DNA of 64,000 nt from Botryllus schlosseri. Its lineage: Eukaryota. The notes under the pieces are model-generated. The model was not told the DNA's origin. It worked only from the letters and a program-made list of their open reading frames with translations, and made no database searches. Within the stretch, counting starts at the first letter, position 1; each line of letters starts with the position of its first letter. Made by a program: the position numbers and the translations under genes. The stretch lies in assembly GCA_051294905.1 (NCBI GenBank), contig CM119378.1:7440001-7504000 (forward strand), in the 5' to 3' direction. Shown piece by piece: positions 22,384-64,000 of the stretch.

Positions 22384-24078
22384 GTAACGAGTAGTCGATA
22401 TCGGTATAACGATTCGCAACTTGAACTTTCCAGTAGATGCGATATCAAAATTGAATGGTGTTCTCCGGTAAATGCGACGGGAAAATAGACTGTTGCGCAC
22501 AAACTGCGGGATCGACAATTCGTGACTGTTGCCATTACTATTCACAAACTCTTCGTAAAGGGAATATACCCTACATGCTATTACGGCTCATTTCAGGCAT
22601 TCATACAAATGCCTGAAGCAGGAAGCGATTTTGCGAGTTTGCGGTTTCCAGGGTTTATTGTGTGTCGCTTATCGATAGGAAACTAGGCGAAGATTATTCA
22701 TTCAGCACGGTATACACAGATCTCCGTCGTAGTATGTTCACAGAATAGATGGTTTATCAAATTGGCGTTATTGCAAATCATTCTGCACACCTGGATCGTA
22801 AAGACAATGAAATTCATGAAAGGGAATCGGGATATAGTTACTGGAATTATAATTACGTTTTACGTGCTGCACTTTGTACCTGCTGTGTTTGCAAGCGGTG
22901 AGTTATTGCGCATCAGTGAATCACTTCGATGTGGTGTAGGCCTGCAGGAGGTAGAAACCAGCTTAATAGATATATTTGATATGCCGAAGTTGAGTTAGTG
23001 TACCGTACTGCACCGCCACGACAGGTGGTAAGTAGCGAAGAGAGAGTGAGAGAATTAGAAAGTACTTCTACTTTTTCGTAGTAGCCTGCTCCTGGTCACT
23101 CGAGAGGTTGTTGTTGTTCTACTATCTCCATTTCTACTAGAACAGTCTTCTTTAAGCACAACTAGGCTCTACTTTCTTTTTACAATTTGAATTTTGCAAC
23201 GTATAACAAGTAGTTTTAGCATAAGCTTGCATCGTTTTTATGAGTGATGTTTCATACAATCAGCGCGAAACAGATTGGCCGTCCCTGTCTTAGCGTCCCT
23301 AACATCGTCAGACGGGCGGTAGGGCTATACGTTTTCCTCTACGGTGCATGAAACATCGCAACACAGTAACGGGTGCTTCTTCCAGCGTTGTTGAATTACG
23401 AAAGTATGAGTAGGCTACTGAGTAGTACGGTAACTACCACACTATCGATGGATGGTTTTATACGAAATCTGGCAGTTTTCGTAACTAACCATTCAGAAAC
23501 CTCACTGGTATTGGTACCATACTAGGCCACCGTAACCTGCTCGCATTGATCGATTGTCAAATACTTTTATTTCATTATATGTCTATCAATACATACTTTA
23601 TCAAGATGCTAGATTTTCAACCCTCAAATGAACTAAAAGGAGTTCTCAACAAAGTATTGCATATCAAAGCCACACCGGAGCGGTGGTGAACAGTAGGCCC
23701 TACCAAGGGCGAGTAAGAGTAATCAGGGGATTTGGGTGCAACGTGCAAGACCGTACGATAGGGCTTGGGGTTAAGAGCGTACAGTAGGTCTTCTCAAGAG
23801 CGGTTAGGGTGCAAGAATGAGTAGTCCGTAGATAATACACAATTTCCCGATTTTATACTGCAATATACAACGGCCTATAAGGGATGATGCGTGATATCGA
23901 CAATAATTCTACCGAATCAAATTTCTCTCCGTAACGGTTCTTCCCCAACCAATTATAGTTTGCCAAACTATAGATTACTAACGTCCGTGTTCACCGATAC
24001 CGGCGATACGTGATTGTGGTAATGTAGCAGTATCTTATTTCAAGACGCCTGACGCCGGCGTTCGAATTCAGAAGTAGG

Positions 24079-30933: not shown

Positions 30934-31137
30934 ACATTGCAGAGCAAGGGTCATGTGAACCAATAACTGAAGAAACACTGCAACAGAAAAACTACATGAC
31001 TACAAGTTGTAACACAGCAGCAAATAGTCAATGTACCTTCACATGCAAACAACATTTCGCGACCGATCTCCGAACCAGTGAAGTAACACTGACATGCACA
31101 GATGGAACTTGGGATGCTGATCTTCACAAATGTGAAG
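30934..31137 (+). CDS. Six-Cys sushi/CCP exon 1
   Basis: SCEPI...TSCNTAANSQCTFTCKQHF...LTCTDGTWDADLHKCE; phase 1-1. Confidence 0.85.
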
Positions 31138-34100
31138 GTGGGTCATTTTCCTTGGCTGCATGTATTTAACATTTTGTTTTCATTCCAGCGCTTTCTAGCT
31201 TTAGGAAAGGAGAATGCTATGTTTGTATAGTAATATGAATTGGTCATTACTGGACGTTAGGGTTCTTTAAACATCTTTTCTAATAACTTTGTCAGATTTT
31301 TGCTGCTATTAGCTAAAATTGTTAGGTTTGTAACGTTGCACACCAAATATGACTGAATTCCGACTGGTAGAAGTAAAACTATCAGAGCTGGAAAAATTTG
31401 AATTTATCATGAAAAATAATTTTTTCAGTTTTGCTGGGCTAACCCATGAAATAGTTAAGTTGACTACAAAAACTATGCAAAACAAATTCGACTCAGTTCC
31501 AGCCCGTAGAATTGACTGTTGACATGACTTTGATCATGACATGACATGACTTTTACCAATATTGAATGTTGGCACTCCGTGAAAACAGCCCCGAAATTCC
31601 TAAGGCTATCTTTCGTATTGGGGGATCAAACTACTTCTACTTGACAAACTGAAAATAGGGAAAAGTAAGTAAGTAGATCACAAAATATTATGAAGTAGAA
31701 GTAGAGACAATTAGATCTACTTGAGTAAGTACCAGAAGTAGAGAAAAACTACATGAGTACTTCCAAAAAGTAGAAATACTTTGTTACTGACCACGTCTGG
31801 CATCAAGTATGCCCTCCTCTCCAACACCAAAGAGATATATGGTTACCCAACTGAAAAACAATAAGCTTCGATCTTAGGCATTCTGTTTTCTCTGTTATTT
31901 ATACAGGAATTATCAATTCATTTCCATAAGAACCCTTTTGTGCTTTTATGAAATCAAGCCTTTGAGCATATGGCTAGGTTTGTCTAAATCTTGAATATTA
32001 TGATAAATTTTCGGGTTTACAAGATGGTGTGATACAATGTCTAGACCAAAAGCTGTCGAAACATAAATTTTACTACTCAAACAGTCCTGTCACATCTACC
32101 TAGGATAGTACTGAAACAGGAGTCTCCCAAGAGATTATAATCATGTGCATAGTGCAGTTATGCACATGATCGATTCTTCAATAAGCGTGGTTTCTTTGAA
32201 CCTGTAATTAAAATGTTATATCAGCAATCAAGTACGAGACATTTAATAAATTGAAGGCAATATCAGAGTGTCGAGAGTATCAGAGTACACGACAGGTACA
32301 GCGACATAGTCGACACCGATTTCTTGATGAGTTGAAATTGACTCGGAAATTTTGGTCCGAGTCCAGAGTCAATCCACATTTTTGAAACGCCGAATCAAGT
32401 CATTTTTGCGAACCAAGTAATCTGAAAAATTGGACAGACGTGAGTCGTCCCAATACTGATACATAGGCCTTCTTGTCATTGCAAAAGCCACTATCTCGTT
32501 AAGAATTAGAATATATGATGGCGAGACTTGATAAAATTCAATTTTAAACCACTCATATAACAATTATTTCGGTGTGCACAGCGAAAATGATTATCTCCCA
32601 AGTCAGTATATGCATAGTGCATGTTTAGTGTTGTTCGGGAGAACGAGGGTGATACTTTTTCATTGCCGGATCACAATGTTAGGTCATGACGAGATGCTGA
32701 AATTTGCAACTGGAATAGTTGAAATTTCAAATTGTAATAACTTCTCTACTACTGGTTGGAATAGAACTAAATCTTGTGTCCCATATTATTTTAGGCAACT
32801 ACCGTAAATATTTCCCCAGGTATCCGGCCAAATTAAAAAAAATTATTTTCAACAGCCTCAACAAATAAGCTTGATCTGGGTGATGTCATAAGAAAAAATT
32901 GTTTTAGAAAGATATATTTTTAGAGATCAAATGCCCAGCCTAAACGTTGCGAGACCCCGATCATTACAATGTTACCTCCTGTCCTGGTGATTCAAAGATT
33001 GGATCAAGCTGTTCAATCACATGCAAAACAGGTTATAAATTGCAGTCCGATACTGAAATAAAGGCGTGGACAGCAACTTGCAAAAATCATGATGATGGGA
33101 TACCTGCCTCTTGGAGCTTGGGTTCAGCACCATCCTGCGAGGCTAAGAGAATAATGAAATGAAAAAAATGAGTCTTGTATCGAATATATCAAAAATAAAG
33201 ATTATTCTAATGACCTATTTAAAGTGTCTGTATCTCAATTTTAAAATTCTTTTCACATGAAAAATTATCATAAATCCAATTATCCAAGTCTACACAAATA
33301 CATTTCAATCAGACTGCCGCCTTGAAATCACTTTATTATTAATGACTGTAGCAACGTCAAGCTGGCATAGCAACCAATAATGAAGTTGGAGTCGTGCAAA
33401 TCCATCTGGTACATGTAAACCAGACAGACTTCCATGGATAGGCGTAGGAAAGCATATTCAACAGTTAAGGAGCATTTTCATATCATACTTGGGTGTAGAT
33501 ATCCAGGCAAACCACTGCTTTCTGATGGAAGTGCGTCCTGGCAGAATTTGGAAAGATGTCAAAGTCACAAGAGCCCTCCCATTCTACTTATCTGCTAGAT
33601 CATTGATTCACAACGGTGTGCAGGAATATGATTCATTACCTTTTGCCAGATGCTTGTATGACTATGAACCAGACTTTAGATTTGGGTCTTATACAGGACT
33701 GTGGCAAACATTTATTTTTTTCATGCGCTGCTGCATATTGGCAGTGATTACCAAACTTTTTGGGTTTTGACACGCTGGAAATATCATATATCGCTGGAGG
33801 CGCACTTACAAGAAAGTTGATTAAAAAACTATCCATGAGTTAATGCAACAGGCTATACTTGTTTATACAAACATTTATTCGACTGAAATAATGTATAATT
33901 GTTGACAAACATGCCCGCATTTTATCGTTTTCCAAGCATTGTCTCCCAGTTATGGCTTTTTATTCAAGTCAAAACCAGAAAAAATAACTCACATACCCAT
34001 TACGAGGCAAATGACAACAAATTGATTGCAGTCGTCATGGAATAGGATTTGGATGAATGAGACATCCGAAACTTTTCGTGACAACAGCATTTCAAAAAAC

Positions 34101-37100
34101 ATGTCTTCTAGTAAATCAATGGGCCCTTCATCTTCTGCAAAATATTTGCTCGATTTATGGCTTCCAAATGGATTGATTGATTTTTTTACAGCAAATCCTG
34201 AAAAGAATTGTTGCAGTGTTAAGTTTAATTCCAGACAACGTGCTCAAGATTTGCGGCATCATTTCTAATTCATGATTTGATTTGAAACGAATCAAAGAAT
34301 TTTATTCAGACATCGCCGCCCAATTATTGTGGGGACATTACTCTATTCATCGGCTATGCCATAATTGGTTTCATGAACACATCTGCTTATATATCCACTG
34401 AAGAAGTCACATCTGCTTGTCTGCAAGCCTTAACCTCAATGTTATTACAGTATTTTTCTAAAATCCCAGAAATACTCGCGGCACACCTGAGAATCGGCGG
34501 TGGCACCCAGTTTGAGAATCCCTGCCTTATCTGGTCAATTTTACAAAATGAATACAAAATAAATTGTACTCACTGCTGAAAATTATGTTCAAAAGTAGTC
34601 CGAAGTACTCGATAGCACAAGTCAGAAAACTGCCATGGATCATAAATTCTTTTTCGACAGCTATCAAGTGTCAACCCTTTGCCCTGCGAGATAGCCATCA
34701 ACATTTGAATGAATATTGTACTGGAACACAACCAGTTGCATCACAATGTCGCATCGGATGTCAGGCAAATTACAGATTTTCTGACGCTGCTTTTCGCGAT
34801 CAATCAAGTATCACTGTAAGTTGTCAGTTGGATGCCGATCGAAATACCGCATCTTGGAGTAGAGACCCAATGGAAACTTCTTGTGAAGGTCTCGTATATA
34901 GAACTGCTATACATGGAGGACAAGTATCTCATCTTGTTTTCTTATATATTGATAGAAGTGAAATGCCGTTCCAAATACGTTCCTGTGGAAAAAAACTACG
35001 AAACACTAGGATGTTCTGAAGGGCATGTTGACGGCTCATGCCGACTCACATGCAAGGAGGGATACATAGTTGCTTCCAATTTAATTGAGTGGACTGCTTC
35101 TTGCAATTTTATCGCAAACAGCATTAGTACTGCAATTTGGAACTTGGAGAGTGCGCCTGTTTGTGAAGGTGAGATAGCAAATATGCAAATCTGGTGATTA
35201 CAAGGTTTTGGCTGGATTGTGAGTGCTATAGCGAGAACTTGTCAATTACCGCAACTGTGTCACAGATAACCATACTTGTAGTTTATGAACTATACTGAGC
35301 CATGAATAAATTAAACAAAATTCTGCTTATTGTCCCTCAATGTGTGCACTAAACTTCAAATGTTAAAGCAGGCCCTGGCGGTTCATGTGTGTTCGATTTT
35401 TTTTGTTTAATTGACGATCTCCGGGCATATCACAATCAGAGCTGGATCAATTACATTAATTCAGTTCAATTACAATTACTCCCATGCATGCTTCAATTAC
35501 ATTACAGTTATAATACTCCATGCTAAAAATATCAAATTACTATTACTGTTAAACATGTAATTGATTAATCATAAATTCAACTTCGATAGAGTGGTGCTCT
35601 TCAGGTTCATTTTAATATGAATAAACTATTCAATTGTATACTGAAGTTCTGTACCTCCGAGAAGCTCTTTGACAACCAGAGCGATGTAATTGGAAACAAT
35701 CACAAGCTTTACATGTTTCATTCATGACATATAGAGTACACTTTAATTCGAAAAAACTGTAACGTTTTCGAAATATTCATAATCATGAGTACTGTAAAAT
35801 ACAAACACAGAAAAAATTTTAAAGTGACTGTTAACAACCAAACGTTTGAACGACTGGCAACGACTAACAACGAATAGGTTACAAGACAGGCAATGAAATG
35901 TAATCATACGAATACGCTGAGCTGAGTAAGGCAAATGAAATGTAATTGGTAAGGCATCAGCGATAAGGATGATAGATAAAGTGTGTAAAAATGAAGTAAA
36001 TGCAAAAGGAATGACGCTCCTGATAACTACAAATTACAAAATTGGGGCTCGTATTTACATTTTCACTTGCTCAAAAACTGTCGGATTGCATTTGATGAAC
36101 ATTAGGGTGCGAAAAGTTTCTGGTCCCAGTATATTTGGCTAAGATTAGGGGTGAGATTGGGAGAACATCTCTTCAAATGCGTGATCAAGTTTGATGAAGC
36201 CTTGGTTGAAAACTTGAATTTCTTTTTGCAATTGTTGCAGCAAGCCTCAGGACTGGTCAAAGATCTTAAAAAAAAACTCAGTGGTGTGAGTAATGGTTGA
36301 GCTCAGGTTTCGGAACTGTTTATTTGCTGTTCATCCATTTTTGAAGTATTAAGATTTAGACCATATTGTAATTTACTAACTTTTCTGTTGCTACTGAAGT
36401 ATGGGAAACTGTTCAGCATGGCTGAATTATTTAGTTAACGATGCACGCATAGCACACCTATGTAAATAGGCCTCATTATTTTATGTTGTGATTGTCAGGT
36501 TTCAATAACAATGCGCTGTAATTGAAATTGTAATTTGGTAAAATTTTTATAAAATTACAATTACAATCACAATTACACAAAATATAAATGCTCTAATTTA
36601 AATTACAATTACATGGAAAATGTAATTTATTACATTCAGCTCAATTACAATTAGCAATTGATCCAACTCTGATCACAATCATATCAAAATGGTAAGATTG
36701 AAGAGTAATCGAACGAATTTTACTGATAGGCCTTGTGTTATTGAAATTTTTGTCAACATTTTCATTGAGATCTTCAACATACCATCTTGCTTACTATGAG
36801 GACAGCTAGGTGGTTGATGCCAGGGAGCGTTTGATCCCAATAAACTATTGTATGTTATGGTAGAATATACTGCCAAAATCTATACTCGGCATGTTCTCGA
36901 TAGTCAACCATAGTCTAACCTGATTTGTAATAGCGTTCTCACATGTAATACTCACCTTGCTATGCAATCCTTGACTTTTTTTAGGGAACACAACAAGATT
37001 TCCAGAGAATATTTCCAAATCAGCTATTTTCAATTTCGGTAAATTAACTTGAGTGATCTGAAAAAACTGTCCTCCTTTTCCGATTCCAAAATATGGTAGC

Positions 37101-40100
37101 CCTAGTCCTGGCAGAATTTGCAAAGATGTCAAAGTCACAAGAGCCCGCTCGTCTACTGCTCTGGTGGATTATTGTTACACAGCCGTGTGCGGGAATATGA
37201 TTCATTACTTTTTCATGCCTCTACATTTTCTACGGCTGTTAGATTACTATTTTTGGTAATGAGAAATAATGATGAAATAATCGGTGGCAGATGCGTTTAT
37301 GAGCAGACTGTAGCAGACTTCATATCTTTATATTATACGGCACCGTGACAAACACATTTGTTGATTATTTTCTCTCATGCAATGCTGGATATTGCTGGAT
37401 TTTCAAATCCTAATATAGTCAATTTTACAAAATGAAGACAAAATAAACTGTACTCGCTACTGAAAATTTGGTTCAAAAGTAGTTCGAGAAGTATTTGATA
37501 TCACAAGTCAGAATACTGCCATGGATCATCTTCCTTTTAACAGCCATCAAGTGTGAACCCTTTGCGCTGAACCGTAACCATCAATATTTTATTGGACCTT
37601 GTACTGGTACACAACCAATTGCATCAGAATGTGGCATCGGATGTCGAACAAATTACAGATTTTCTGACCCTGCTTTTCGTGATGAATGGAGTATGACTAT
37701 AAATTGTCAGTTGGATGCGGATCAAAATACCGCATCTTGGAGTAAGAATCCAATGGAAACTTCTTGTGAAGGTCTCGTTTATAAAGCTGTTATACATGTA
37801 GGACAAGTATCTCATCTTATATGGTTATATGTTTATAGAAGTGAAATGCCGTTCCAAATATGTTCCTGTGGAAAAAAACTACGAAACACTACAATGTTCT
37901 GAAGGACAAGTTGGCGGCTCATGCCGACTCACATGCAAGGAGGGATACAGAATTGCTTACAATACAATTAGGTGGACTGCTTCTTGCAATGTTATCACAA
38001 ACAGCAGAAGTACTGCAATTTGGAACGTGGAGAGTGCCCCTGTTTGTAGAGGTGAGATAGCAAATGCAAATCTGGTTATTACAAGGTTTTGGCCTAATTG
38101 TGAGTATAATGAAATAGCGAGAACTTAGCGGTTACCGCAACTGTGTCATAGATAGCCATACTTGCAGTTTATGAACTATACTGAGCCATGATTAAATTAA
38201 ACACAATTTTGTTCATATCATGTCCCTCAATGTGTGCATTGAACTTACAATATTAGTGCAGGCTCTGGCAGTTGAAGTGTGTTTGATATTTTGTTTCATC
38301 ACAGAGTAATATTGACGATTCCCGGTCATATCACAATCATTAGAAAGGCAAAATTGAAGAGTAACGGATTTTACTGATACTGTCAACATTTTCAATGATT
38401 TCTTCAACTCACCATCTGGCTTACTATGAGGACAGCTCGGTGTTTGATCTCAATGACTATTGACTGTTATCGTGGAAACTACTGTTATTATTACTCAAAG
38501 TGTTTATGTGGACCAGAGTTGGATCAATTGTAATTTGTAATTGAGCTGAATGTAATCAATTACATTTTTTCATGTAATTGTAATTGTAATTGAAGCATTT
38601 CTATTTTGTGTAATTGTAATGAGATAAAAAAATTGTTCAGTTACAATTTCAATTACATTGTTACGGAAACCTGACAATCACAACATAAAATAATCAATCA
38701 AATCATTTATTCGTCACACCAGTGAAAATCCGGTACGGACCAGGATGACGACGAGGGGCCGCAAGGTCTTAAGGCCTTAGTACATAGTCGCCACCTGTGA
38801 TAATTATCCGATTTATATCGGTGTTCTATGCGTGCCGTGTTATAACTATATAATTCAGGCATGCTGAACTGCTTCCCATACTTCAGTAGCAACACAAAAC
38901 TTTGTGAATTACAATATAGGCTAAACCAGTGATTCTCAAACTGGGGGGCGTGCCCCCCTTGGGCGGCGTGAAAGCATATGAAGGGGGGGGGGCGCAAAGC
39001 CCGAGTAAACTGAAATTTTTTCCGGGCTTGGCGCGATTCACCTCCATTTCATAGTTATTGCTCTGTGCATAGTCTGAATTTCAATTGGAGATTTCTCTCA
39101 TCAACAGTCATAACCTTCCGTACCATCAAACTATCTGTAAGGATTGCTAACATTCTGTTTTCATTGTGTGATATGACGATAAGAGTGGGCACGAAATATT
39201 TCACTGTCATAAAGGGGGCGTGTCTAAAAAAGTTAGAGAATCAGTGGGCTAAATTAAATCTTAATATTTCAAAAATGGATAGACAGCAAATAAACTCTTC
39301 TAAAACGTATGCTGAAGCCGAGGCTTGCTGCAACAATTGCAAAAAGAAATTCAAGTTTCCAACCAAGGCTTCATCAAACTTGATCACGCATTTGTAAAGA
39401 TGTTATCCAGGGTTGTCATGATTCGACTCGAGTCACGATTTTCTGATGACTTGACTTGACTAGAGTCATTTTATCAAAATACGGAAATGACTCGACTCGA
39501 CTTGAGTCAATTTGTGTATTGACTCGACTTGGACTCGAGTCATTACGCATGACTCGAACCAAGTCATATGACTCCAGACTCAGACGGCCAAGACCGACAT
39601 TTAATTGTAATTTCAAAGAATAGTAAAGTAACCACACTATTGGGATTTCGTACGGGTACTTGAAAATGCGAACAGAAATTGCTAAAATGAGCAAAATTTT
39701 TATAATATCAATGTGAACCATTCGATATCACCAAGTAGAGTTATAAAATGTGGGTTTGACAAGACTTCAACAGGAAACTGAGCAGTCAACACAATGACTT
39801 GGACTCGGACTCGAGTCATAATACCATGACTCGGACTCAACCCTTTGCTCGCTGACTTGGACTGGGACTTGACTCGCTGGTGAATTGAAAATGACTCGAC
39901 TTGACTCAAGTCAAAACTATAAAAGTGAGATTGACTTGTGACTTGGTTACAACCCTGATGTTATCCCAATCTTACCTCCAATCTTGGCGAAATTTACTGA
40001 GGCAAGAAATTTTCGGACCCTAATGTTCATCAAATGCAATCTAACAGTTTTCGAGCAAGTGAAAATGTAAATGCGAACCAAAATGTTGTAATTCGTAGTT

Positions 40101-55100: not shown

Positions 55101-58100
55101 AAACATGTACCCAACACATTCAGTATTATCAAATATCCATGAGTAATTGCGTTTACTGCACTTAGTGCATTCAGCTTGTAACTTTGAGTGCCAGTCTGAT
55201 GAATGAGGCCGATTTTTTAAATCTGTGTAACGCCCCTGCTTTGCAACAGAACTCAATCTCCTCCATTATTCGGCACTTCTTCGATGGCAGTCAGAAATCG
55301 AAAAGTGTTCACCATGATCACCAATGAATGTTTTCCATGAACACAAACAAAAATTTAGAAACGTCAAAATGTATTGTTTTTGCGTTTGGAGAGGGTTAGG
55401 GTCAAAGTTGGGTTTAGGGTATCCCAGGATTAGGGTTGGTGTATTAGGGTGGGGGCCGGGGATATTAGGGTTGCGGGAGGGGGGATATTGGGGTTGGGGT
55501 TAGGGGGATATTTGGGTTGGAGTTAGAGGGACATTAGGGTTGGGGGGTTGGAGGTGGGTTAGGTTCAAAGTTGGGGTTAAATTACCCCTAACCGGGGTTT
55601 AACCCACCTCCAATCTCCCTTTCCTCCAACCCTAATATCCCCTCTCCCACAGCCCTAATATCCCCCTAACCCCAATATCCCACAACCCTAATACCCTCTA
55701 CCGCAACCCTAATACCCCCCCTAACCCCAGCTCTAATACCCCCTCCCCTAACCCTAGTATCCCCTCTCCCACAGCCCTAATATCCCCCTAACCCCAACCC
55801 TAATATCCCCCCTCCCACAACCCTAATATCCCCCCTCCCACAACCCTAATATCCCCCTCATGCAACCCTAACCCCAGCCCTAATATCCCCCTCCCGCAAC
55901 CCTAATATCCCCCTCCCACAACCCTAATATCTCCCTAACCCCAACTCTAATATCCCCCTCCCGCAACCCTGATATCCCCCTCCCACAACCCAGAGATGAG
56001 CGGATTTGAAATTTCTATGTCCTAATCCAATCCAAATCCGAACCTTCAAATCCAAATCCTAATCCATAACTTTTTCATATTCAAGTCCATGTCCAATCCT
56101 AATCCGATTCCAACTGGAAATTCAGAAAAAATACTAATTTATGCAATGGATGGATTCGAAAATTTTCTTTCACAACCAACGATTCACTTGATATAAGATA
56201 ACTTAGTAACCATAAGTACATTTATAACTGATCTGAATAAAGTTTGTCGCCATTCGCCACACGACATTTCAATCTCCCAGAAAACAGGTAAATCCAATCC
56301 AAATCCTAATCCGTTCTGAAAAAATTGTCTAATCCAAATCCGACAAAATTTCACAAATCCTGTTTTTTCAAAACCTAATCCTAATCCATGCTCATCTCTG
56401 CCACAACCCAAATATCCCCGCTCCCAAAACCCTAATATCCCCCTTCCCTAATCTTGGGATACCTAATCCCAACTTTGACCCTAACCCACTTCCGATCTCC
56501 CTTTCACCCCAACCCTAATATCCGTCTCTCCAAAGGCACAAAAAACATTTATTTCGACGTTTATAAATTTTTGTTCGTGATCATGGAAAACATTCATTGG
56601 TGATCATGGTGAACACTTTTCGATCTCTGACTGCCATCGAAGAAGTGCCCATTATTCTACATACTGCTGTGATATGCTGTACCATTCCAATACCAACCAA
56701 TATCTTTCTCATAGCATCCTAGTCCTTAGTAGTTTTACGCGATCTCAAGTTTTTCAATGCTACTAGGCTCATTTCAAAACAGAGGAACATGTGTGAGTTT
56801 GGATAACGCAAAGAAATTGATTCCATCGGCATGTGACTCAAAGCATATGTTCATATGTGAAAAACCACCACAGGGAAGTAAGTTCTGTATTATTCGAGAA
56901 ATCTGAATTTTCAATTTACCTATAATGTTAAAACATGAAGGGAATCCATGTGATGATTCTAAAAACTGTTCCGGTAATGGTCACTGTACTCCTGTTGGCT
57001 GCTCCTTTCTTTGTAAATGTCAAGATATATACTATGGAAGGTATTGCAACAAAGGTGAGAACCATTGATAACAATATTTTTCCTGGCTATAATGTCTTAG
57101 TAATTGCAGGGCCTTTAACTATTGGAATTGCGAAGACTTCAATAGTAGGACAATACGAGATAGCACTCAAAAACGATGCTGACAACTATACAGGAGTATT
57201 CTATTTTCTGGTTAACGGCAAGGAAGAGAGGAATGTGACCTTGGGCCCTGAAGATAAGGAGAAGTATGATACAATGCAATTTGTTGAGAGTGGTGCCAGC
57301 ATTCTGTAAAAATCCTGAGGGGCATGCTGAATTTATTTTTATGAATCTCTCGTGGAAGCTGTTGCATCATTAATTCCAGGTTTGATTACAACTTGGAAAA
57401 GCCTGTGATGAAATATGAGACATACCTGAGCGTAGAAGCATCATTACTTGAAAGGCCAGTAACGGTGTCGGAATGTAAACGCATTCCTGGTCTAGAAAGT
57501 CTGACAAACATCACCAATGATGAATGCAATGGACATGTTTTGAATGTTTCTTGGCCAGGATTTGTTGATGACGCGCAGGATTCAAGGCCTTATTCTGTGT
57601 ATATAATGGGGAAACTGTAAGCGTTTTGTTATAATCAGCATTAGTGTTGAGGTAGTAACTCCCCTTCATAGAATACAAGGACAATATGAATTGGTATCAA
57701 AATTAATTGCAGTAATCTGGATGTCTGTCTCCAATGTAATTAGTTCTATTGACTGTCTCGGCAAATACCTATACCAGCCACCTACGCCATGTAGCACCTA
57801 TTATAAAATTTATATTGATGAATCATATGTTTGTGTTGAAAGCAGGGCACGGTATGGTATGGAATGGGAATCTTCCATACTCCATACCCTCCCAATCGTT
57901 CCATACCATACTTGACAATTTTCCATGCGATAGCAACATTATTCCATACCATATTTGACACTTTTTCCATACTGTCGCAACTTGACCAACCTCTTAAGTG
58001 ATATTATATTTTTGATGTGTGGAAATGTTCCGGCGTTTATATTCTAATTATTTTGGATGAGATTATCTATTTAAACAGCCCCGATGCACCAATAATATCC

Positions 58101-61100
58101 CCAGTTTCTTTATATCATATGTCGTCAGCGATTTACGAACATATACTATAGGCCTATACACACGTGATTATTTGAAAATCACAACAGAATTTCACGGCAT
58201 GTAAATCTAGTGTGGTAACGCACTGCTAGCAGTAACCTCATCAACAGAATTACATAAAACAAAGGTATTGTCAAATAATAAGATAGGTTCCCAACCTTTA
58301 CACACTTTAAAATTTCTCCTCCAATAAAATTTGGTAAGACTTTATTTTGTAAAGACTTGCTATTGGTGAAATTTAAGACCCCCGGAATGGAACAGCACGC
58401 AATAAAATTAATGAGCAGTGAACTGGCAACCGTACACGTGACGTTGCGTCTCGGTAAAATGTGTATGTAAGGTGAGCCTACAGAAAAATAGGAAAGGTTT
58501 GAAATTTTTCCAAATGTACCAATGTAGCATCAATTTACATATGTAAATGACGAGTATATTGCATGGATCAGATAAACTCCCTGGTGTTGACGTACTTATG
58601 CGTATGGTGGATATAAGCCACCATAACCTACACTGTCGCTCGCTACTATAACTCGAGCGGCAAGAAATATGTCATTTCATCAGTAACGAGTCCGGCTATG
58701 TTATCAATTAGCGATTCCACGGTCTCCCGTGAATACATATTCATATACATATGAACTTAATTTTAACAAAGCAGGTGATTTCAATCACACCAATTCGCAT
58801 ACGAATGAATAACAACCTATATGAGGGAAATCGCGTGACGCTATATCCAATCGATTCTCGCTAATTGGAGGCACTGATAATACGAATTGCTGAATTGCAA
58901 ATGAGCGAAGAAATATTAGTGATATATACGATCGGCATTTCATACAGACGTTTAATAAACGAAGTTAAAAATGTAAAGAATTTGTTTTCCAATTGAGTCT
59001 ATTCCCAACCAGAAGCCCCCATCGGTTGGAAACACCTGCATTAGAATATATCTTGAAATACAATTTTACATCAGTACAACCATTTTGCGACAGCTGATCA
59101 AATGTCTATTTTCCGTGCCTATCTGTGGATCACACTCATTAGCTTTATTAGCCAACATCAAGGTGTCCGCTTTCCATTACATCAAAAATAACCAGATTTC
59201 ATGAAGTCACAATGCGTGTTGTAGGCCGGCATATCGTAACGTCACTCCAAGACAAGCTACATATTACAATGATGGTTCAGTCAAATAGATATTGCGTGAT
59301 GATCATTCTCCCAAAGCGCAGAAAATTATTTCCAAGTTCAACAAATTGATAAAAATATTCATGTAACTTCTACTTTCTCAGAGTCTGCGATTATAAAACT
59401 TCCATTGGTTATTTACGCAGTGGAAAGTTACGATGAGCGAAATGCAATTGTAACGCGACAGCGGTCGAATATCATTCATTTTTATGATATTTGAATTGGA
59501 AGAATTATCAATAACATTATTTTCATTGATATTCGCGTCACGAAACTTTGCTGTCTTCAAATAGATGTCGAACGGGATGGGTGAGTCATGATTCATGAAT
59601 CACAATTTGAGATATGAACTTGGACAGTGAGTGATTTTCTGTGGTATGCAATCAATTTGAGAAATCGAAAGTAGGATTATTGTCATGGTTCTGGCAGAAC
59701 TGTCAAAGTATGAAAACAGTACAGAAGTATGGAGAACACGTTCCATACCATACTTGGTAAATTTCCATAAAATACCATACTTGCACTTTTCCATATTCCA
59801 TACCGAAATTTCGTTCCATACCATACTTCATACCATACCATACCATGCCCTGGTTAAAAGGCAAGATGAATATCCTTATAGAAAATTTACCCCTAATATG
59901 GACCATTTAGCATGAAATGCAATTCAATAGACTTGATTTTATGTTCTTTAACAATCGTTATTCACGGCTTCTGACCTCATGTTCAGGATCGGAAGATCAC
60001 GCGCAGGGGAATGGTTTCAAATCTCTGAACTAGATCCTGGTCGTAACACTCTTGTCCAGGTTTGTACTCTGCTTGCAGGAAGCGAAACCACATTTGTAAT
60101 TCGACATCACATTTTAGGTTATTCCGCATGTTCGCGGATGTGACGGTCTTAACATACAAAAAGACTACGAGAAGATTATCACCAGAACAGCAAAAGGCCC
60201 TCCCGACTCTCCTGTCGTTTGGGCACCAAAGAAAGCAATTGGTATTCTGCCTGACCAAAGCTGTCACATAAACTGGACATTGAACGGGAAGGAGAATGCT
60301 GGTGGATATAAGGTAAATTTGTTGTCTGGGCTGAGGAGTTTATTGTTTCACGTACACCCGTTCTCATCCAGGTGAAGATCGTTGAATTTGCACGATCGTC
60401 GAAAATGGCGCATGGAAATGAAAGCATTTTTAATATTCATCCTACTAATGACACCTATAATTTCACAACAAAACCGAATTCTGTTTACAACATATCTGTG
60501 GGAACGGTAGCCCTTCCCATATGTCCAGATGTTCCTGTGAATTGGAGTCCTACAGTTAGTGGCTGTACTAGCGAAACTAGTGGTAAGTGAATCGTAGCAG
60601 TGATTTCCAACCCTTTTCTCCTCATGTAATGGTGATAATTCAACCGAGGTCCGTCAAAGATTGTTCTAATTTTGATGTATTTGAACGAAGGCTCTTAAAA
60701 TTGCAAAATTTTTAGTGGCCAGTTTACAACGTTGTTTTGTTTTGGCAGCTATAAATTTATTCTTAGTTTGTAGTTGGTTGACTAAAAAAAGGTCATCACT
60801 ATGATTCGACTACCGAATTACCCACTTTTCCCGTTAATGTTGTGGTATTGACTAAAAAAAAAGTCGTCTTTCTGGTTCTACTCCCGAAAGACCCGCCTGA
60901 GTACTTGAGTACTAATTTCCTATATCTCAGTTTAAATTTCACATACATTAAACCAAAATTTTCAAAAAATAGGACAAAGTCTCAAAAATAGGACAGTCGG
61001 CCTATTTCGGCTCGTTCGTGAATCGCATAATATTGTTTGCAAATCTGGTGTTTAAAGGGTAGAGATAAAATTACCCGTTGGGGTAAGAGGGGTGTGAGCG

Positions 61101-63365
61101 ATTTGTCCCCTAGAGATTAGCGTGATCGTCCTATGAGGGTGATTTTGAACCGGTGAATGTGATTCACGATATTAAAGTTTCATTGTCAAAAACGCAATCA
61201 GACATAAGCCGACCTAGTTGCAAAAGAAATTGGCTACGCCTGTCACATTGACACCATAAAATCAAACATTTCGTTCTGAGCTGATTTTGTAAGGGTCCGT
61301 GAGTCATTCAAAAAATTGCCACGTGACCATTTCGTGAATTTTTTTCAAAAGTTTGAGAACCACTGTTCTAGATGATTTCATAATGTATAATTGTTGATCA
61401 AATATATATTTTAGAGATCAAATGCGCAACCGAAACGTTGCAAGACACGGATCACTACAATGTGTCCTACTGTCCTGGTGATTCAAAGATTGGATCAAGC
61501 TGTTCAATCACATGCAAAGCTGGGTATAAATTGCAGACCGGAACTGAAATGAAGGAGTGGAAAGCAATTTGCAAAAAACATAGTGATGGGTTACCTGCCT
61601 CTTGGAACTTGAATTTAGCACCTTCATGCGAGGGTAAGAGAATAATGAAATTTAAATAATGAATCTTTCATTGTATATATAAAAAATAAAGATTATTCTG
61701 ATTATGACCTGATTGAAGTGTATGTATCTCAGTTTCAAAATTATTTTTTTGTGAAAAATGATCATAAATCTAACTATCCGAAACTGCATGAATACATTTC
61801 AATCAGACTGGGCTCTTGAAATTGCTTTATTCATAATGATTGTAGCAACGTTAAGCTAGCATAGCAACCAATAATCATGTTGGCGGCATGCAAATAGATC
61901 AGGTACATGTAAACCAGATACACTTCCATGGATAGGCGTAAGAAAGCGAACTCGCAGTTAAATGTCATGTATTAGTTTGCGGCAGTCATCACCGTCGGGA
62001 TGACATGCAAATGAATATAGTCTGCTCTACCAAATTATACTTCTCGCTCGCATGGTCTTACCAGTATGACGCGGGCATGATGTTGACATCCTTGAAGCAG
62101 AATCACGTCTTCAGCATTTCTGCATCATCAATGGTACAGTGACCTACATGCTGCAAGAAAGTTATTTACAGCAAGGTCTGCATATGTAGTCTGATTTTTC
62201 CTACTGGCAATAACTTCATCACAATTTTTCGAAAATGGTGATGTTAGTCAATGTTACATTGCATGGCGAGTTTTGACTTGAAATTCATGAATCCATCCAT
62301 CAAGCGTACATTCAAATATTATCATCATCAAATTTGACATTCATGGGCTATATCAGTTACGCTAGACCAGTGGTTCTTCATCTTTTTGTCTTCGCGGACC
62401 ATTTTTTTCAAATTTAGCTCTTCTATCGTGCAATCGTCATCTGTCCTCTGCAAATATCAGCTACATGCTAGTGACAAACAGCAACAAAATTACCATTCTT
62501 GAAAATAACATCATGGCCTACTATGTATGTAGAAATTGGAAATACTTTTATTATTTCAAAGGTAATTCTGTAGCTGAATTTCTTGAGATACGCAGACGTG
62601 TCTTGAAAATACACACCGTCTATTTCATACGAACTACCGTAAGTCATCTAAGTTTGGTTTGATTTTAGATACAGTCCACCACTTCTTGCCGGTTTTGAAC
62701 AAATCTACTTTTTCAACTATTTACTTGAGTACCTTCCAGATCCTTCGTTTTCTACTCCCTCTTAAAGTAGTTTTGATAGATCTTGGGAATTGCTACTTGT
62801 AATTGAGTAGAAATTTACTTCCACTTCTATGTGAGTAGTAACGTTGACCATTTTAACCCCCCTCCTGGAAAAATAACAACAGAAAACTACATTACTGCTA
62901 TCATAATATGACTATGAATCAGATAAGAAAGTCAAATTTCCGGTAGCTAACCAGAACCCATACTAAACCTGCAAGCAGCCCAGTTTTGCAGTTTTGGGTC
63001 ACACTTTGCCGACCACTGCTGTAAGGTGTAAGTTGGATATTGGATAGCGATGAAAATTCCTCATTGTGGTCCTGGTCTTCCACGTTATATTTTTGAGAAG
63101 ATGTTATGTTAGATAGCTATATTGATTGAAATTTTAACATTTTATATGGTTATATTAACAGTGGGGTGCAGATCCATGAATGTACCAAGTGATAAAAACT
63201 ACCATACTAGACAATGCACAGATGAAGTTGTTGGGAGATCTTGCCTACTCACATGTAAGGATGGTTACAGAATTAATTCAACCTCAAGGCAATGGAATGC
63301 TACATGCAATGTAATCTCAAATAGTGTTGGAAGATGGGACTTCGACAGTGCCCCTAGTTGTCAAG
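30934..63365 (+). CDS. Mosaic extracellular or receptor protein: sushi repeats, C-type-lectin-like, EGF, FN3-like, sushi; probably 3'-partial
   Basis: Frame-compatible exons: 30934(or 30943)-31137, 34661-34888, 34956-35168, 37544-37771, 37839-38051, 45672-45866, 52609-52833, 52891-53115, 56941-57054, 57110-57263, 57380-57616, 59987-60059, 60118-60312, 60372-60582, 61415-61633, 63162-63365. That they form one transcript is an inference. Confidence 0.7.
32924..33142 (+). pseudogene. Inactivated sushi exon (pseudo-exon)
   Basis: In-frame TAA at 32941-32943 (GAA in the paralog) and donor CTAAGA instead of GTAAGA at 33143. Same 219-nt length as the intact paralog 61415-61633. Confidence 0.85.
34661..35168 (+). 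CDS. Two sushi exons (34661-34888, 34956-35168), duplication unit 1
   Basis: Six Cys plus Trp pattern in each, GT-AG borders, phase 1-1. Confidence 0.88.
35437..36671 (-). mobile_element. hAT-type element, family B (TIR CAGAG(C/T)TGGATCAATT), with BED zinc-finger relic
   Basis: Perfect TSD ATCACAAT (35429-35436, 36672-36679); empty paralogous site near 38330; minus-strand relic CNNCKKKF...SNLITHL. Confidence 0.92.
37544..38051 (+). CDS. Two sushi exons (37544-37771, 37839-38051), duplication unit 2
   Basis: Same lengths (228, 213 nt) as unit 1, open frames, GT-AG borders; the flanking introns are also homologous. Confidence 0.88.
38927..39246. mobile_element. Buster-type hAT MITE, family C (TIR CAGTGATTCTC)
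   Basis: TSD GGCTAAAC/GGCTAAAT (7/8, central TA); related copies near 45061 and 30013. Confidence 0.8.
39408..39957 (-). mobile_element. Family A MITE nested in family B
   Basis: TIRs; perfect TSD ATGTTATC (39400-39407, 39958-39965). Confidence 0.92.
42205..43944 (+). pseudogene. Penelope-like retroelement relic (GIY-YIG endonuclease region)
   Basis: VYEYKCHCDCGYVGRTSKCLQERINQH, then after a frameshift SAIGKHLLD|NPICANNY...FHLCAL...P.LCQQKKFVY across the MITE insertion. Confidence 0.8.
42609..43781. mobile_element. Buster-type hAT non-autonomous element (TIR CAGAGGTCTCAAAC)
   Basis: Perfect TSD TGTTAGAT (42601-42608, 43782-43789), central TA. Confidence 0.92.
44360..45593 (+). mobile_element. 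hAT-type element, family E (TIR CAGTGTTGGGAT), with a nested family C copy at 45061-45366
   Basis: TSD TAAGTCTG/TAAGCCTG (7/8); homologous to 50683-51638. Nested copy has flanks CTCTAACA/CACCAACA. Confidence 0.82.
45672..45866 (+). CDS. Six-Cys sushi exon
   Basis: ILCPW...ATCVERSINSQCQIQCLNGF...IVCTL...FWPAPRCN; AG/GTAAGT borders, phase 1-1. Confidence 0.85.
45972..46299 (-). repeat. 3' LTR
   Basis: Direct repeat of 52033-52360. On the minus strand a TATA-like TATATAAG precedes AATAAA. Confidence 0.92.
50291..51782 (-). pseudogene. 175-aa ORF of unknown function at the gag position, interrupted by a MITE
   Basis: Removing 50683-51638 plus one TSD copy joins 51782-51639 (48 codons) in frame to 50674-50291 (127 codons plus stop). 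Confidence 0.6.
50683..51638 (+). mobile_element. Family E element inside the LTR element
   Basis: TIRs CAGTGTTGGGAT/ATCCCAACACTG; perfect TSD GTTTATGG (50675-50682, 51639-51646); (CAAGT)n and GACTCGAGTC subterminal arrays. Confidence 0.92.
52033..52360 (-). repeat. 5' LTR
   Basis: Direct repeat of 45972-46299; terminal TGCAG...CTGCA; abuts the PBS-like motif at about 52015-52032. Confidence 0.92.
52609..52833 (+). CDS. Six-Cys sushi exon
   Basis: VRCE...QDCIYGTVCTVSCARGYQF...LTCG...KWE...GLCE; phase 1-1. Confidence 0.85.
52891..53115 (+). CDS. C-type-lectin-like exon (N-terminal two thirds of the fold)
   Basis: CQYWFS...AKKHCKDVLGENAALAIL...LVGAY...YWNDG follows the CTLD pattern (C-Y-F, A..C, A.LA.I, W.DG). 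Divergent, and no canonical Ca2+ motif is seen. Confidence 0.6.
53162..53464 (-). mobile_element. Family H MITE (short)
   Basis: TIRs TAGGGTTGCCATA/TATGGTAACCCTA and homology to 24079-24496. No clean TSD. Confidence 0.75.
53730..55042. mobile_element. Foldback-like element with about 200-bp TIRs and an internal minisatellite
   Basis: Arms about 53730-53932 and 54789-55042 are inverted copies starting CC(A/G)GTGAACTCGGCC. No TSD identified. Confidence 0.75.
54378..54775. repeat. C-rich CCCTAA-containing minisatellite
   Basis: Degenerate 20-24-bp units such as CAACCCTAATATCCCCCTCC. Confidence 0.85.
55272..56649. mobile_element. Foldback element with long TIRs starting GGCAC (possibly Merlin-type)
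   Basis: About 120-bp inverted arms; perfect 8-bp TSD CATTATTC (55264-55271, 56650-56657); interior of inverted telomere-like minisatellite. Confidence 0.85.
55991..56400. mobile_element. hAT-type MITE (TIR CAGAGATGAGC)
   Basis: Perfect TSD CCACAACC (55983-55990, 56401-56408); AATCC subterminal repeats. Confidence 0.92.
56941..57054 (+). CDS. EGF-like exon
   Basis: NPCDDSKNCSGNGHCTPVGCSFLCKCQDIYYGRYCNK; donor GTGAGA. The acceptor (AAG) is less certain. Confidence 0.85.
57110..60582 (+). CDS. Five exons encoding a beta-rich linker and FN3-like modules
   Basis: 57110-57263, 57380-57616 (LNVSWP...YSVYI), 59987-60059 (FQISELDPG..LVQ), 60118-60312 (PPDSPV...INWT), 60372-60582 (KPNSVYNISV); phases 1-2-2-0-0-1 are consistent. 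Confidence 0.72.
57843..59852. mobile_element. hAT-type non-autonomous element with (GGTAT)n subterminal repeats
   Basis: TIRs CAGGGCA(C/T)GGTATGGTATG; TSD GTTGAAAG/GTTAAAAG (7/8). Confidence 0.85.
61415..61633 (+). CDS. Six-Cys sushi exon (intact paralog of 32924-33142)
   Basis: IKCATE...YCPGDSKIGSSCSITCKAGY...ICKK...SWNLNLAPSCE; AG/GTAAGA borders. Confidence 0.88.
63162..63365 (+). CDS. Six-Cys sushi exon (diverged relative of 34956 and 37839)
   Basis: GCRSM...KNYHTRQC...SCLLTCKDGYRI...WNATCNVISNS...WDFDSAPSCQ; AG/GTGAGA borders. Confidence 0.85.
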
Positions 63366-64000
63366 GTGAGATCATAAGCATTTCATAACAAATTAATTAT
63401 ATGCTGGTCTCGAAGAAGTAGAGGTTTTGGGCTGGGTTGCAAGTACGACCTACAGGGTTGGCGTGATTGCATGCAAAATAAGGTCAGCCGTGACACTTTG
63501 GGTGTGGGGGGGTTAGTCGCGCATGAAGCCAATTTTCAAATCAAACTTTTTTCTTATAGAATCAAATTAAAATATGTTTCCTAGAGCAACTCCAAATCCA
63601 AATTGTGCTTTGTCATACCAACATTGAAATTTTATATCCAAATCCGAACATACCCGTAATTTTCCATGTATAATGCGCTAAATTTAACTGATTTTTTGCC
63701 CTAAAATAGGGGGTGCGTATTATATAAGGGTACAGCAAGCCTTTAAAAAAAATTCCTCGATCAAAACTTGAAATCACACCTTTCTTCATGTTTGTTTAAA
63801 TCGCGCATTACCTCCAGCCATTGGGCCCCGTAATTCGTATTATAGAGTGTAACGCGCTGCCAAATAGAGAAGCGTGTTTCTAATTAACGAGAGTCGTCTG
63901 CAAGCACGCGATCTCTTGCTGAGTTGGTTTGCAGTTTGTACGCGAGCAAAATCAGGTCACTGATTGCTACAAGCGTGCGCGGCAATCCTTGTTGATTCAT

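What the first reader, a model, noticed from the sequence alone, without database searches (positions are those of the whole stretch)
30934..63365. Selectin-like module set in an unfamiliar order next to an RPTP: candidate variable recognition receptor
Seen: all ten sushi exons have six Cys and phase 1-1 borders. The order is sushi x7, lectin-like, EGF, linker, FN3-like, sushi x2, with no stop or TM reached in the window. Established: six-Cys sushi repeats with a lectin-EGF pair characterise selectins, and FN3 arrays characterise RPTP ectodomains. I do not recognise this architecture. Inference: it may be the ectodomain of a second, tandem RPTP paralog, part of a cluster of phosphatase receptors with shuffled immune or allorecognition-type ectodomains. 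The window does not show the link.
Basis: partly seen in the sequence, partly recalled or inferred. Interest (0 to 1): 0.72.

Follow-up and report, generated by a model that had tools for sequence, protein, structure and literature searches.

The report
Ectodomain-only copy of receptor phosphatase gene
The exon array is real, but it is a young partial copy of the outer half of a neighbouring membrane tyrosine-phosphatase gene that has no membrane anchor or phosphatase part of its own, so at most it makes a secreted protein; its RNA has not been seen clearly.

Summary
The module exons exist where stated. Nine of the ten sushi exons are intact, with six Cys and phase 1-1 borders. The second, 32924-33142, is dead: an in-frame TAA and a GT>CT donor.

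With 200 kb fetched downstream, the array proves to be one unit (u1) of a tandem cluster on one strand. Four units (u0, u2, u3, u4) carry membrane-proximal, transmembrane and tandem PTP exons. Five carry a signal-peptide exon plus ectodomain exons. u1 is the odd one.

From 30.9 to 60.7 kb, u1 is about 90% identical to u2, introns included. It then breaks off before the membrane-proximal, TM and PTP exons, and none lies in the next 34 kb. The last two sushi exons, su9 and su10, come from other duplicated segments, though their phases fit.

The 14 compared exons have no stops or indels and keep all splice sites. dN/dS against u2 is 0.44, and the u1 lineage alone shows constraint (33 synonymous, 45 non-synonymous changes).

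Four RNA runs gave no reads on FN1a, su9 or su10, and about four on FN2b.

My best reading is a secreted ectodomain-only paralog. A dead relic or read-through into u2 remain open. The scan earlier noted other sushi/lectin phosphatases elsewhere in this genome.

The parts
22816..22897 (+). Signal-peptide exon of unit 1. It is 27 codons long, starts with ATG, has a hydrophobic core and ends in a phase-1 GTGAGT donor. It lies outside the finding's coordinates.
   Evidence: The copy ahead of u2 at ext 79988 is 85% identical in protein and 89.5% in DNA; weaker copies lie ahead of u3 and u4.
30943..31137 (+). Sushi exon 1 (su1): six Cys, phase 1-1. Alternative acceptors lie at 30934 and 30949.
   Evidence: Pfam Sushi E 6e-5, above the cut-off. 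Borders. 92% identical to u2.
32924..33142 (+). Dead sushi exon (su2). It has a TAA at 32941-32943 and the donor GT has become CT. The u2 copy shares the donor loss, has a different stop and has also lost its acceptor.
34661..35168 (+). Sushi exons su3 (34661-34888) and su4 (34956-35168), separated by a 67-nt intron.
   Evidence: The su4 model has the CCP fold.
37544..38051 (+). Sushi exons su5 (37544-37771) and su6 (37839-38051). They are an internal duplicate of the su3-su4 pair.
45672..45866 (+). Sushi exon su7.
45969..52364 (.). 6.4-kb insertion in the su7-su8 intron. It is absent from u2, where that intron is 343 nt.
Evidence: Collinearity gap.
52609..52833 (+). Sushi exon su8, followed by a 57-nt intron (52834-52890).
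   Evidence: GTAAGT donor. The intron is shown by a stop there in u2 and a frame change in u4.
52891..53115 (+). First exon of the C-type-lectin-like domain (CTLDa).
   Evidence: Borders. No Pfam or PDB sequence hit. The AlphaFold model has low confidence, pLDDT 50.
56767..56877 (+). Second exon of the C-type-lectin-like domain (CTLDb), ending in the FICE motif.
   Evidence: Pfam Lectin_C E 0.016, 16.3 bits against a cut-off of 22.6; it matches profile positions 77-107 of 107.
56941..57054 (+). EGF-like exon: six Cys, phase 1-1.
   Evidence: Pfam EGF_2 E 0.018, below the cut-off. 97% identical to u2.
57110..57263 (+). Linker exon L, phase 1 to phase 2. It is conserved in u2 and u4.
57380..57616 (+). 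Exon FN1a, the first half of an FN3-like domain. Its strong GTAAG donor is phase 2, which does not fit the next exon's phase 0. This junction is unresolved in all four units.
57842..59853 (.). 2-kb insertion relative to u2 and u3, in the intron after FN1a.
   Evidence: A few RNA reads map here from repeats.
60118..60582 (+). Exon X (60118-60312), a 59-nt intron, then exon FN2b (60372-60582). Together they form the second FN3-like domain. The FN2b donor is GTAAGT in phase 1.
   Evidence: Four-unit alignment, in which u4 conservation starts exactly at the acceptor. Third-position excess of changes. No Pfam hit.
60718..60718 (.). 3' breakpoint. Collinear homology with u2 (to ext 120729) and with u3 ends here. 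u2 and u3 go on to their membrane-proximal, TM and PTP exons; this unit does not.
61415..61633 (+). Sushi exon su9: intact and of the su2 type. It sits in a 600-nt segment that is 82% identical to the su2 regions of u1 and u2.
63162..63365 (+). Sushi exon su10: intact. It sits in an 860-nt segment that is 90% identical to a u3 segment at ext 180329-181198.
1255..14517 (+). 3' half of the upstream unit u0. It has a membrane-proximal exon (1255-1521), a juxtamembrane exon (3301-3528) and D1 and D2 PTP exons with the KNRY, QYWP, WPD and SAGVGRTG motifs.
   Evidence: The nearest solved structures are PTPRE and PTPRA.

Best explanation
What is shown. The finding is unit 1 (u1) of a tandem cluster of lineage-specific receptor tyrosine phosphatase genes. 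It is a young partial duplicate (dS about 0.12) of the 5' half of the next gene, u2.

It keeps a signal-peptide exon, seven usable six-Cys sushi exons and one dead one. It also keeps a compact C-type-lectin-like domain, an EGF module, a linker and two FN3-like domains.

It ends at 60718. That is upstream of the point where the complete paralogs continue with a membrane-proximal exon, a TM exon and tandem PTPalpha/epsilon-like phosphatase domains.

Two intact sushi exons from other duplicated segments follow, and their phases are compatible with u1.

What is inferred. u1 is still a gene. It most likely encodes a secreted, ectodomain-only protein, ending either just after FN2b or after su10. Such a protein could bind the same partners as the membrane phosphatases without signalling, as a soluble competitor or decoy.
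For: Structure. The collinear match with u2 covers 11.3 kb of aligned blocks, introns included, at 89.7% identity. The membrane-proximal, TM and juxtamembrane exons of u0, u2 and u3 have no counterpart between 60718 and ext 94600. Nor do PTP motifs.

The genome holds 4 sets of membrane-proximal, juxtamembrane and PTP exons against 5 ectodomain units. Each unit has its own signal-peptide exon.

Integrity. Fourteen exons (864 codons) align to u2 without gaps or stops, and every AG and GT is kept. dS is 0.116, dN 0.052 and dN/dS 0.44. All Cys are conserved.

The proximal modules have pN/pS of about 0.24. That is below the 0.5 floor expected if one copy were drifting neutrally.

Changes polarised with paralogous exons give the u1 lineage 33 synonymous and 45 non-synonymous changes. 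That is omega 0.37-0.49, with P between 2e-5 and 0.002 against neutrality.

End of the reading frame. Reading through the FN2b donor gives a stop after two codons, and AATAAA-type signals lie 365 and 590 nt downstream.

RNA. About four reads in run X15 match FN2b with only two SNPs. That is closer than u2 or u3, which are 92-93% identical.
Against: There is no transcript evidence of weight. Four bulk RNA runs, subsampled to 1.1-1.9 Gb each, gave no reads on FN1a, su9 or su10, no splice joints and only about four reads on FN2b.

No terminal exon or poly(A) site has been shown.

The FN1a-to-X junction has a phase mismatch with the strongest donor. This is true in all four units, so the exon model is incomplete.

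The polarised counts could be biased by gene conversion among paralogs. u2 and u3 are closer to each other than to u1 in the X-FN2b region.

su9 and su10 have good splice sites. A transcript that passes them has no obvious terminator before u2.

The decoy function is pure inference.
Confidence: 0.4

Rival explanations
1. Non-functional relic. u1 is a truncated duplicate that is not expressed, or no longer is, and is on its way to decay.
For: It lacks the 3' half of the gene. One exon is already dead. Large insertions have entered three introns since the duplication. There is almost no RNA signal. No spliced product is present in the protein collections searched.
Against: The dead exon was already dead before the duplication, because u2 shares the donor loss. 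The other 14 exons have no stop, no indel and no lost splice site across 864 codons at dS 0.116. The u1 lineage shows omega of about 0.4-0.5, significantly below 1. The RNA runs had no positive control for the family, and this species' RNA is not in the indexed assemblies.
Confidence: 0.3
2. 5' extension of the next gene. Transcripts would start at the u1 promoter and run through su9 and su10. They would then splice into u2 exons and so reach the TM and PTP exons. The result would be a phosphatase with a doubled ectodomain or with alternative ectodomain cassettes.
For: All relevant borders are phase 1: the FN2b donor, su9, su10, the u2 su1 exon and the membrane-proximal exon. No terminator or terminal exon has been found after u1. 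Selection on u1 fits any coding use.
Against: u2 keeps its own intact signal-peptide exon and upstream region, as do u3 and u4. The jump would be 31 kb, or about 60 kb to reach the membrane-proximal exon. No reads lie on su9 or su10. No other unit in the cluster shows a doubled module set.
Confidence: 0.2
3. Assembly artefact. u1 would be the other haplotype of u2, wrongly placed in tandem.
For: The earlier notes call this an ascidian genome, and ascidians are known to be highly heterozygous. u1 and u2 are collinear over about 30 kb.
Against: Divergence is about 10% and dS is 0.116. The copies differ by several kb-scale insertions, by a 6.3-kb stretch holding three sushi exons in u2, and by different flanks on both sides. 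RNA reads match u1 more closely than u2 at FN2b.
Confidence: 0.05

Closest known systems
Selectins (E-, P- and L-selectin)
   Same: They also combine six-Cys CCP/sushi repeats, one C-type-lectin-like domain and one EGF module, with each module on its own phase-1 exon.
   Different: The order is reversed: here sushi comes first, then lectin, then EGF, then FN3. There is no TM or tail in this unit. The lectin-like domain is compact, lacks the EPN/WND calcium and sugar site, and fails the Pfam cut-off. Pairwise comparisons with one canonical lectin domain, the selectin-type CTLD + sushi-array protein P0003, found no significant similarity.
Receptor tyrosine phosphatases of the PTPalpha/PTPepsilon (R4) type
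   Same: The complete paralogs u0, u2 and u3 have a single TM and tandem D1-D2 domains. The PTP exons were tested for u0 only, and their best solved relatives are PTPRE and PTPRA.
   Different: Vertebrate R4 ectodomains are short and unstructured (PMC10815196). These paralogs have large modular ectodomains. The unit under study has no TM or PTP part at all.
Phosphacan, the secreted ectodomain form of PTPRZ (from my own knowledge)
   Same: It is a soluble protein consisting of a receptor phosphatase ectodomain without the catalytic part.
   Different: Phosphacan arises by alternative splicing of one gene. Here a separate truncated gene copy would do the job, and its secretion has not been shown.
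Soluble members of tandem immune-receptor clusters, such as LILRA3 (from my own knowledge)
   Same: It is a truncated paralog in a tandem receptor cluster that keeps the signal peptide and ectodomain but lacks the anchor.
   Different: The domain types and signalling partners are unrelated. The comparison is by analogy only.
Other sushi/lectin receptor phosphatases noted by this scan in the same genome (s1-246864, s1-262585)
   Same: They show the same theme: PTP domains behind sushi, lectin and FN3 modules, described there as a fast-evolving ascidian group.
   Different: They lie on other chromosomes and are intact genes. The nearest PTP exons outside this cluster are at most 59% identical. 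Their claim of database copies was not reproduced for this cluster: the su8 + lectin-like query, the only search that could return full-length proteins, found no full-length relative, and the FN2b search, limited to short hits, found one fragment.

Membership tests
Sushi / CCP module (PF00084) | Pfam profile match at or above the gathering score. | tested here: met
   su1 scores 23.8 bits and su2 24.3 bits against a cut-off of 20.7. Five further exons have E between 0.001 and 0.13, and three have none. All ten are homologous to one another.
Sushi / CCP module (PF00084) | CCP fold, with conserved Cys pairs and a conserved Trp. | tested here: met
   Five Cys columns and the Trp are invariant in the alignment of nine exons (A3). 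The remaining Cys sits in a shifted position in su8. The su4 model has pLDDT 89, and its top PDB matches are almost all CCP modules, with TM about 0.5-0.6 and weak E of 0.13 or more. A sequence profile against the PDB gave no hit.
Selectin | Architecture, from N to C: lectin domain, EGF, CCP repeats, TM, short tail. | tested here: not met
   The order here is CCP x8, lectin-like, EGF, linker, FN3-like x2, then CCP x2, with no TM.
Selectin | Calcium-dependent sugar site (EPN and WND motifs) in the lectin domain. | tested here: not met
   The joined lectin-like sequence has no EPN or QPD, and no WND after the third Cys.
C-type lectin-like domain (PF00059) | Pfam match above the gathering score, or a recognisable fold. 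| tested here: inconclusive
   The C-terminal exon scores 16.3 bits against 22.6 (E 0.016), and the N-terminal exon has no hit. A profile against the PDB found nothing. hhalign against a canonical lectin domain gave probability 7%. Smith-Waterman scoring was not above shuffled controls. The AlphaFold half-domain has pLDDT 50, though its strand and helix order fits. The Cys pattern and the WFS, ALAI, WNDG and FICE motifs fit on reading.
EGF-like domain | Six Cys in EGF spacing and a Pfam match. | tested here: inconclusive
   Six Cys are present. EGF_2 has E 0.018 and 15.9 bits against a cut-off of 22.1.
Fibronectin type III domain | Pfam fn3 match or a confirmed fold. | tested here: inconclusive
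   None of the half-domain exons has a Pfam hit. Only the motif pattern fits: PPxSP, a Trp in strand B, GYKV, and a Tyr-x-Ile-x-Val strand. The joined domain could not be submitted for folding.
Receptor-type protein tyrosine phosphatase | A transmembrane segment and at least one PTP domain with the WPD loop and HCX5R motif in the same gene. | tested here: not met
   This unit has none between 60718 and ext 94600. The paralogs u0, u2 and u3 do have them.
Pseudogene (unprocessed duplicate) | Disabling lesions, or neutral evolution with dN/dS about 1. | tested here: not met
   Only su2 is disabled, and that lesion predates the duplication. The other 14 exons are clean. dN/dS is 0.44 overall, and omega on the u1 lineage is 0.37-0.49 with P of 0.002 or less. 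The missing 3' half and the lack of RNA keep this reading open.

The most novel reading that the evidence does not exclude
The cluster works as a variable-ectodomain phosphatase locus. Under this reading, ectodomain units with their own promoters, u1 among them, would be spliced onto a downstream membrane-proximal, TM and PTP block, in the manner of clustered protocadherins or UGT1A. One phosphatase module would then be presented with alternative sushi-lectin recognition heads.
Probability: 0.07. Interest if true: 0.8.

Novelty: new variant of a known kind. Interest (0 to 1): 0.4.

Why it matters
Receptor tyrosine phosphatases are usually described with Ig, FN3, MAM or carbonic-anhydrase ectodomains. 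A tandem cluster that puts sushi, lectin-like and EGF modules in front of PTPalpha/epsilon-like domains widens that picture. In this cluster the tip of the ectodomain evolves fast, the base is conserved, and exons die or are added without breaking the reading frame.

The cluster also offers a simple model of how modular receptors diversify by phase-1 exon shuffling.

The unit studied here could be a naturally made soluble form of such a receptor, if it is expressed. Its binding partners would then point to the ligands of the whole family, which are unknown.

If it is a relic, it is an ordinary by-product of segmental duplication.

Tried and rejected
- Upstream sequence. Only one lectin-like exon of u0 is known, from a genome search.
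- Full-length relatives. The representative search with su8 plus the lectin-like part gave 8 hits, and the close ones are only genomic fragments. The two long hits are unrelated sushi proteins without PTP domains.
- FN2b search. It gave one fragment, from the same 3.6-kb Logan contig, and the DNA of that contig could not be read.
- Lectin-like domain. The following all failed: a PDB profile, hhalign, Smith-Waterman with shuffles, ESM Atlas, which returned only irrelevant phage families, and an AlphaFold half-domain with pLDDT 50.
- Sushi profile against PDB sequences. No hit.
- Candidate exon 'Y' (57685-57840). I considered it as a way to mend the FN1a-to-X phase mismatch and rejected it. It has frame-breaking indels among the units and stops in u2 and u3.
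- Sushi-8 and the lectin-like part as one exon. Rejected, because of the GTAAGT donor, a stop in u2 and a frame change in u4.
- RNA.
- Literature. No paper on sushi/lectin phosphatases in tunicates was found. The Botryllus FF/FcoR allorecognition families are unrelated in architecture.


Full report
Coordinates. The window is G000:C8:7440001-7504000, + strand. I fetched the next 200 kb as L009-L028. Earlier notes of this scan call the genome an ascidian's. I did not test that.

1. The observation

Stop-to-stop reading of the window shows Cys-rich open stretches on the + strand at the stated places. Ten of them are sushi-type exons.

Nine have six Cys, a pyrimidine-rich AG acceptor, a GT donor and phase 1-1 borders. 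Pfam Sushi is above its cut-off for two exons, weak for five and absent for three. All ten hit one another by tblastn.

An AlphaFold model of su4, which has no Pfam hit, reached pLDDT 89. Its best PDB matches are almost all CCP modules of C1s, factor H, MASP, CR1, IL-15R-alpha and CD55, with TM about 0.5-0.6 and weak E-values, as expected for a 70-residue domain.

The second exon (32924-33142) is not intact. It has a TAA at 32941-32943, and its donor reads CT.

Between su8 and su9 lie these exons:
- a lectin-like domain on two exons, 52891-53115 and 56767-56877;
- an EGF exon, 56941-57054;
- a linker exon, 57110-57263;
- three exons that read as FN3-like: 57380-57616, 60118-60312 and 60372-60582.

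Two mini-introns of 57 and 59 nt are supported by comparison of the paralogs.

The lectin, EGF and FN3 labels are weak. Pfam gives Lectin_C E 0.016 and EGF E 0.018, both below the cut-off, and nothing for FN3. Every further test of the lectin-like domain failed or was inconclusive.

The joined lectin-like sequence has the Cys pattern and several hallmark motifs of a C-type lectin-like domain. It has no EPN/WND sugar site.

2. What it is

Using the window's exons as queries against the 264 kb shows a tandem array, all on the + strand.

- u0: its 3' half is in the window at 1.2-14.5 kb. It has a membrane-proximal exon, a juxtamembrane exon and D1 and D2 PTP exons. One lectin-like exon lies 10 kb upstream of the window.
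- u1: this is the finding.
- u2: signal-peptide exon at ext 79988, the sushi array from ext 94637, the lectin-like, EGF and FN3 exons to ext 120588, the membrane-proximal exon at 122132, the TM exon at 122421-122564, the juxtamembrane exon at 123314, and PTP exons from 123547 to 131446.
- u3: ext 136.7-214 kb. It has no lectin-like exons.
- u4: from ext 229.7 kb, running on beyond the sequence fetched.

Genome-wide there are exactly four copies each of the membrane-proximal, juxtamembrane and PTP active-site exons, all in this cluster. There are five ectodomain units.

The KNRY, QYWP, WPD and SAGVGRTG motifs are intact in u0, u2 and u3. The nearest solved structures are PTPRE and PTPRA.

u1 matches u2 collinearly from 30940 to 60718, which corresponds to ext 94634-120729. 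The match includes introns: 11.3 kb of aligned blocks at 89.7% identity. The signal-peptide exon at 22816-22897 and its surroundings are also duplicated, at 89.5%.

Relative to u2, u1 lacks 6.3 kb that holds three sushi exons in u2. It has gained a 6.4-kb element in the su7-su8 intron (also noted in s1-258732), a 2-kb insertion after FN1a, and two insertions in the lectin intron.

Homology with both u2 and u3 stops at about 60715. After that come:
- a repeat;
- a 600-nt su2-type segment carrying su9, 82% identical to the su2 regions;
- an 860-nt segment carrying su10, 90% identical to a u3 segment;
- about 15 kb of repeats with no convincing ORF;
- the upstream region of u2.

No membrane-proximal, TM, juxtamembrane or PTP exon is present there.

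3. Is it alive?

Fourteen u1 exons (864 codons) align with u2 without a gap or a stop. Every splice dinucleotide is kept in both copies.

dS is 0.116, dN 0.052 and dN/dS 0.44.

The distal sushi exons su1-su7 have pN/pS of about 0.76, with all Cys kept. The proximal modules, su8 to FN2b, have about 0.24. The difference is significant (Fisher P 5e-4).

A ratio well below 0.5 is hard to get if one of the two copies has drifted neutrally since the split.

I polarised the differences with paralogous exons: su5/su6 for su3/su4 and the reverse, and u3 or u4 for the rest. This gives 33 synonymous and 45 non-synonymous changes on the u1 lineage. That is omega 0.37-0.49, with P between 2e-5 and 0.002 against neutrality.

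The u2 lineage has 20 synonymous and 48 non-synonymous changes, not distinguishable from neutral. The two lineages do not differ significantly from each other (P 0.12).

One caveat applies. u2 and u3 look homogenised in the X-FN2b region, so gene conversion occurs here and may bias such counts.

The dead su2 exon shares its donor loss with u2, so it died before the duplication. Each copy has since acquired its own stop. Because all sushi exons are phase 1-1, skipping su2 keeps the reading frame.

4. RNA

Only raw-read RNA runs of this species were offered. I laid four bulk runs on 57450-63449 at 96% likeness or more.

This gave no reads on FN1a, su9 or su10, and no joints. About four reads in run X15 fell on FN2b. 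They carry two SNPs not found in u2, u3 or u4. FN2b of u2 and u3 is only 92-93% identical to u1, so these reads fit a u1 allele best.

This is a hint of transcription, no more.

5. How the reading frame could end

The FN2b donor is phase 1, like the acceptors of su9, su10, the u2 su1 exon and the membrane-proximal exons.

- Unspliced reading past FN2b stops after two codons.
- Unspliced reading past su10 stops after seven codons.

AATAAA-type signals follow both.

Three outcomes therefore remain: a secreted ectodomain-only protein, read-through into u2, or no product.

I rank them 0.40, 0.20 and 0.30, with 0.05 for an assembly artefact and the rest unassigned.
- Each unit has its own signal-peptide exon, which favours separate genes.
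- The selection signal argues against a long-dead relic.
- The missing terminator and the silent RNA keep the other readings open.

6. An unresolved point

In all four units the strongest donor of FN1a is a conserved GTAAG with an in-frame TAA lying across it. It is phase 2. Exon X clearly starts in phase 0.

A candidate bridging exon fails on indels and stops. Weak phase-0 donors exist a few codons upstream.

The exon model of this family is therefore incomplete here. This affects the complete genes as much as u1.

7. Comparison and novelty

The module set recalls selectins. But the order is reversed, the sugar site is absent and FN3-like domains are added.

The complete paralogs are receptor phosphatases with PTPalpha/epsilon-like catalytic halves and an ectodomain type not listed among the vertebrate subgroups (PMC10815196). 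It is also not described in the papers I could search.

The scan has noted two other sushi/lectin phosphatases elsewhere in this genome (s1-246864, s1-262585). The theme is therefore not unique to this locus.

For this cluster, the su8 + lectin-like search, the only one able to return full-length proteins, found no full-length relative, only short genomic fragments at 67% and 84% identity. This fits a fast-evolving, lineage-restricted family.

u1 itself is an ectodomain-only offshoot of that family. Functionally it resembles phosphacan or soluble members of immune-receptor clusters, by analogy only.

Noticed in passing
window 57600-57620 and 60110-60120, and the same places in u2, u3 and u4 (L014, L022, L027-L028): In all four units the strong GTAAG donor at the end of exon FN1a is phase 2 and carries an in-frame TAA, while the next exon starts in phase 0. 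Either a weak upstream donor is used, or a small exon is missing from the model, or this site yields a truncated isoform.
   Followed up: partly
window 57750-57842, with counterparts at ext 119800-119880, 197400-197480 and 255747-255812: A block of about 60-90 nt in the intron after FN1a is conserved even in the most diverged unit, at about 73%. It has frame-breaking indels and stops, so it looks like a conserved non-coding element or a decayed exon.
   Followed up: partly
It therefore inserted after the u1/u2 duplication.
   Followed up: partly
window 53711-56653: Two insertions of about 1.4 kb each, relative to u2, lie in the lectin intron. The stretch at 54-56 kb is C-rich (GC 0.48, GC skew -0.30) and reads as proline-rich repeats in one frame.
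   Followed up: no
L012:1298-2438 (ext 95298-96438): A sushi exon of u2 is split by an insertion of about 0.9 kb. u2 also carries an extra intact sushi exon at ext 99404-99607 that u1 lacks.
   Followed up: no
L017:973, L019:6276 and L020:6860 (ext 144973, 170276 and 180860): u3 has three su10-type sushi exons spaced 10-25 kb apart, and the first has AA in place of the AG acceptor. u3 has no lectin-like exons. This shows repeated local duplication and loss of single modules.
   Followed up: partly
window 28153-28701: A 183-aa open frame starting with ATG lies in the spacer between u0 and u1. It has only a faint match to a C17orf113-type zinc finger (E 0.24) and may be a transposon remnant.
   Followed up: no
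window 63654-64000: This is a high-copy repeat, with dozens of copies at 83-93% identity on many chromosomes. It starts 290 nt downstream of su10.
   Followed up: no
window 58850-59850: A few RNA reads of run X15 map here on both strands, with clipped ends and small indels. The site is inside the 2-kb insertion, so they most likely come from other copies of the repeat.
   Followed up: no
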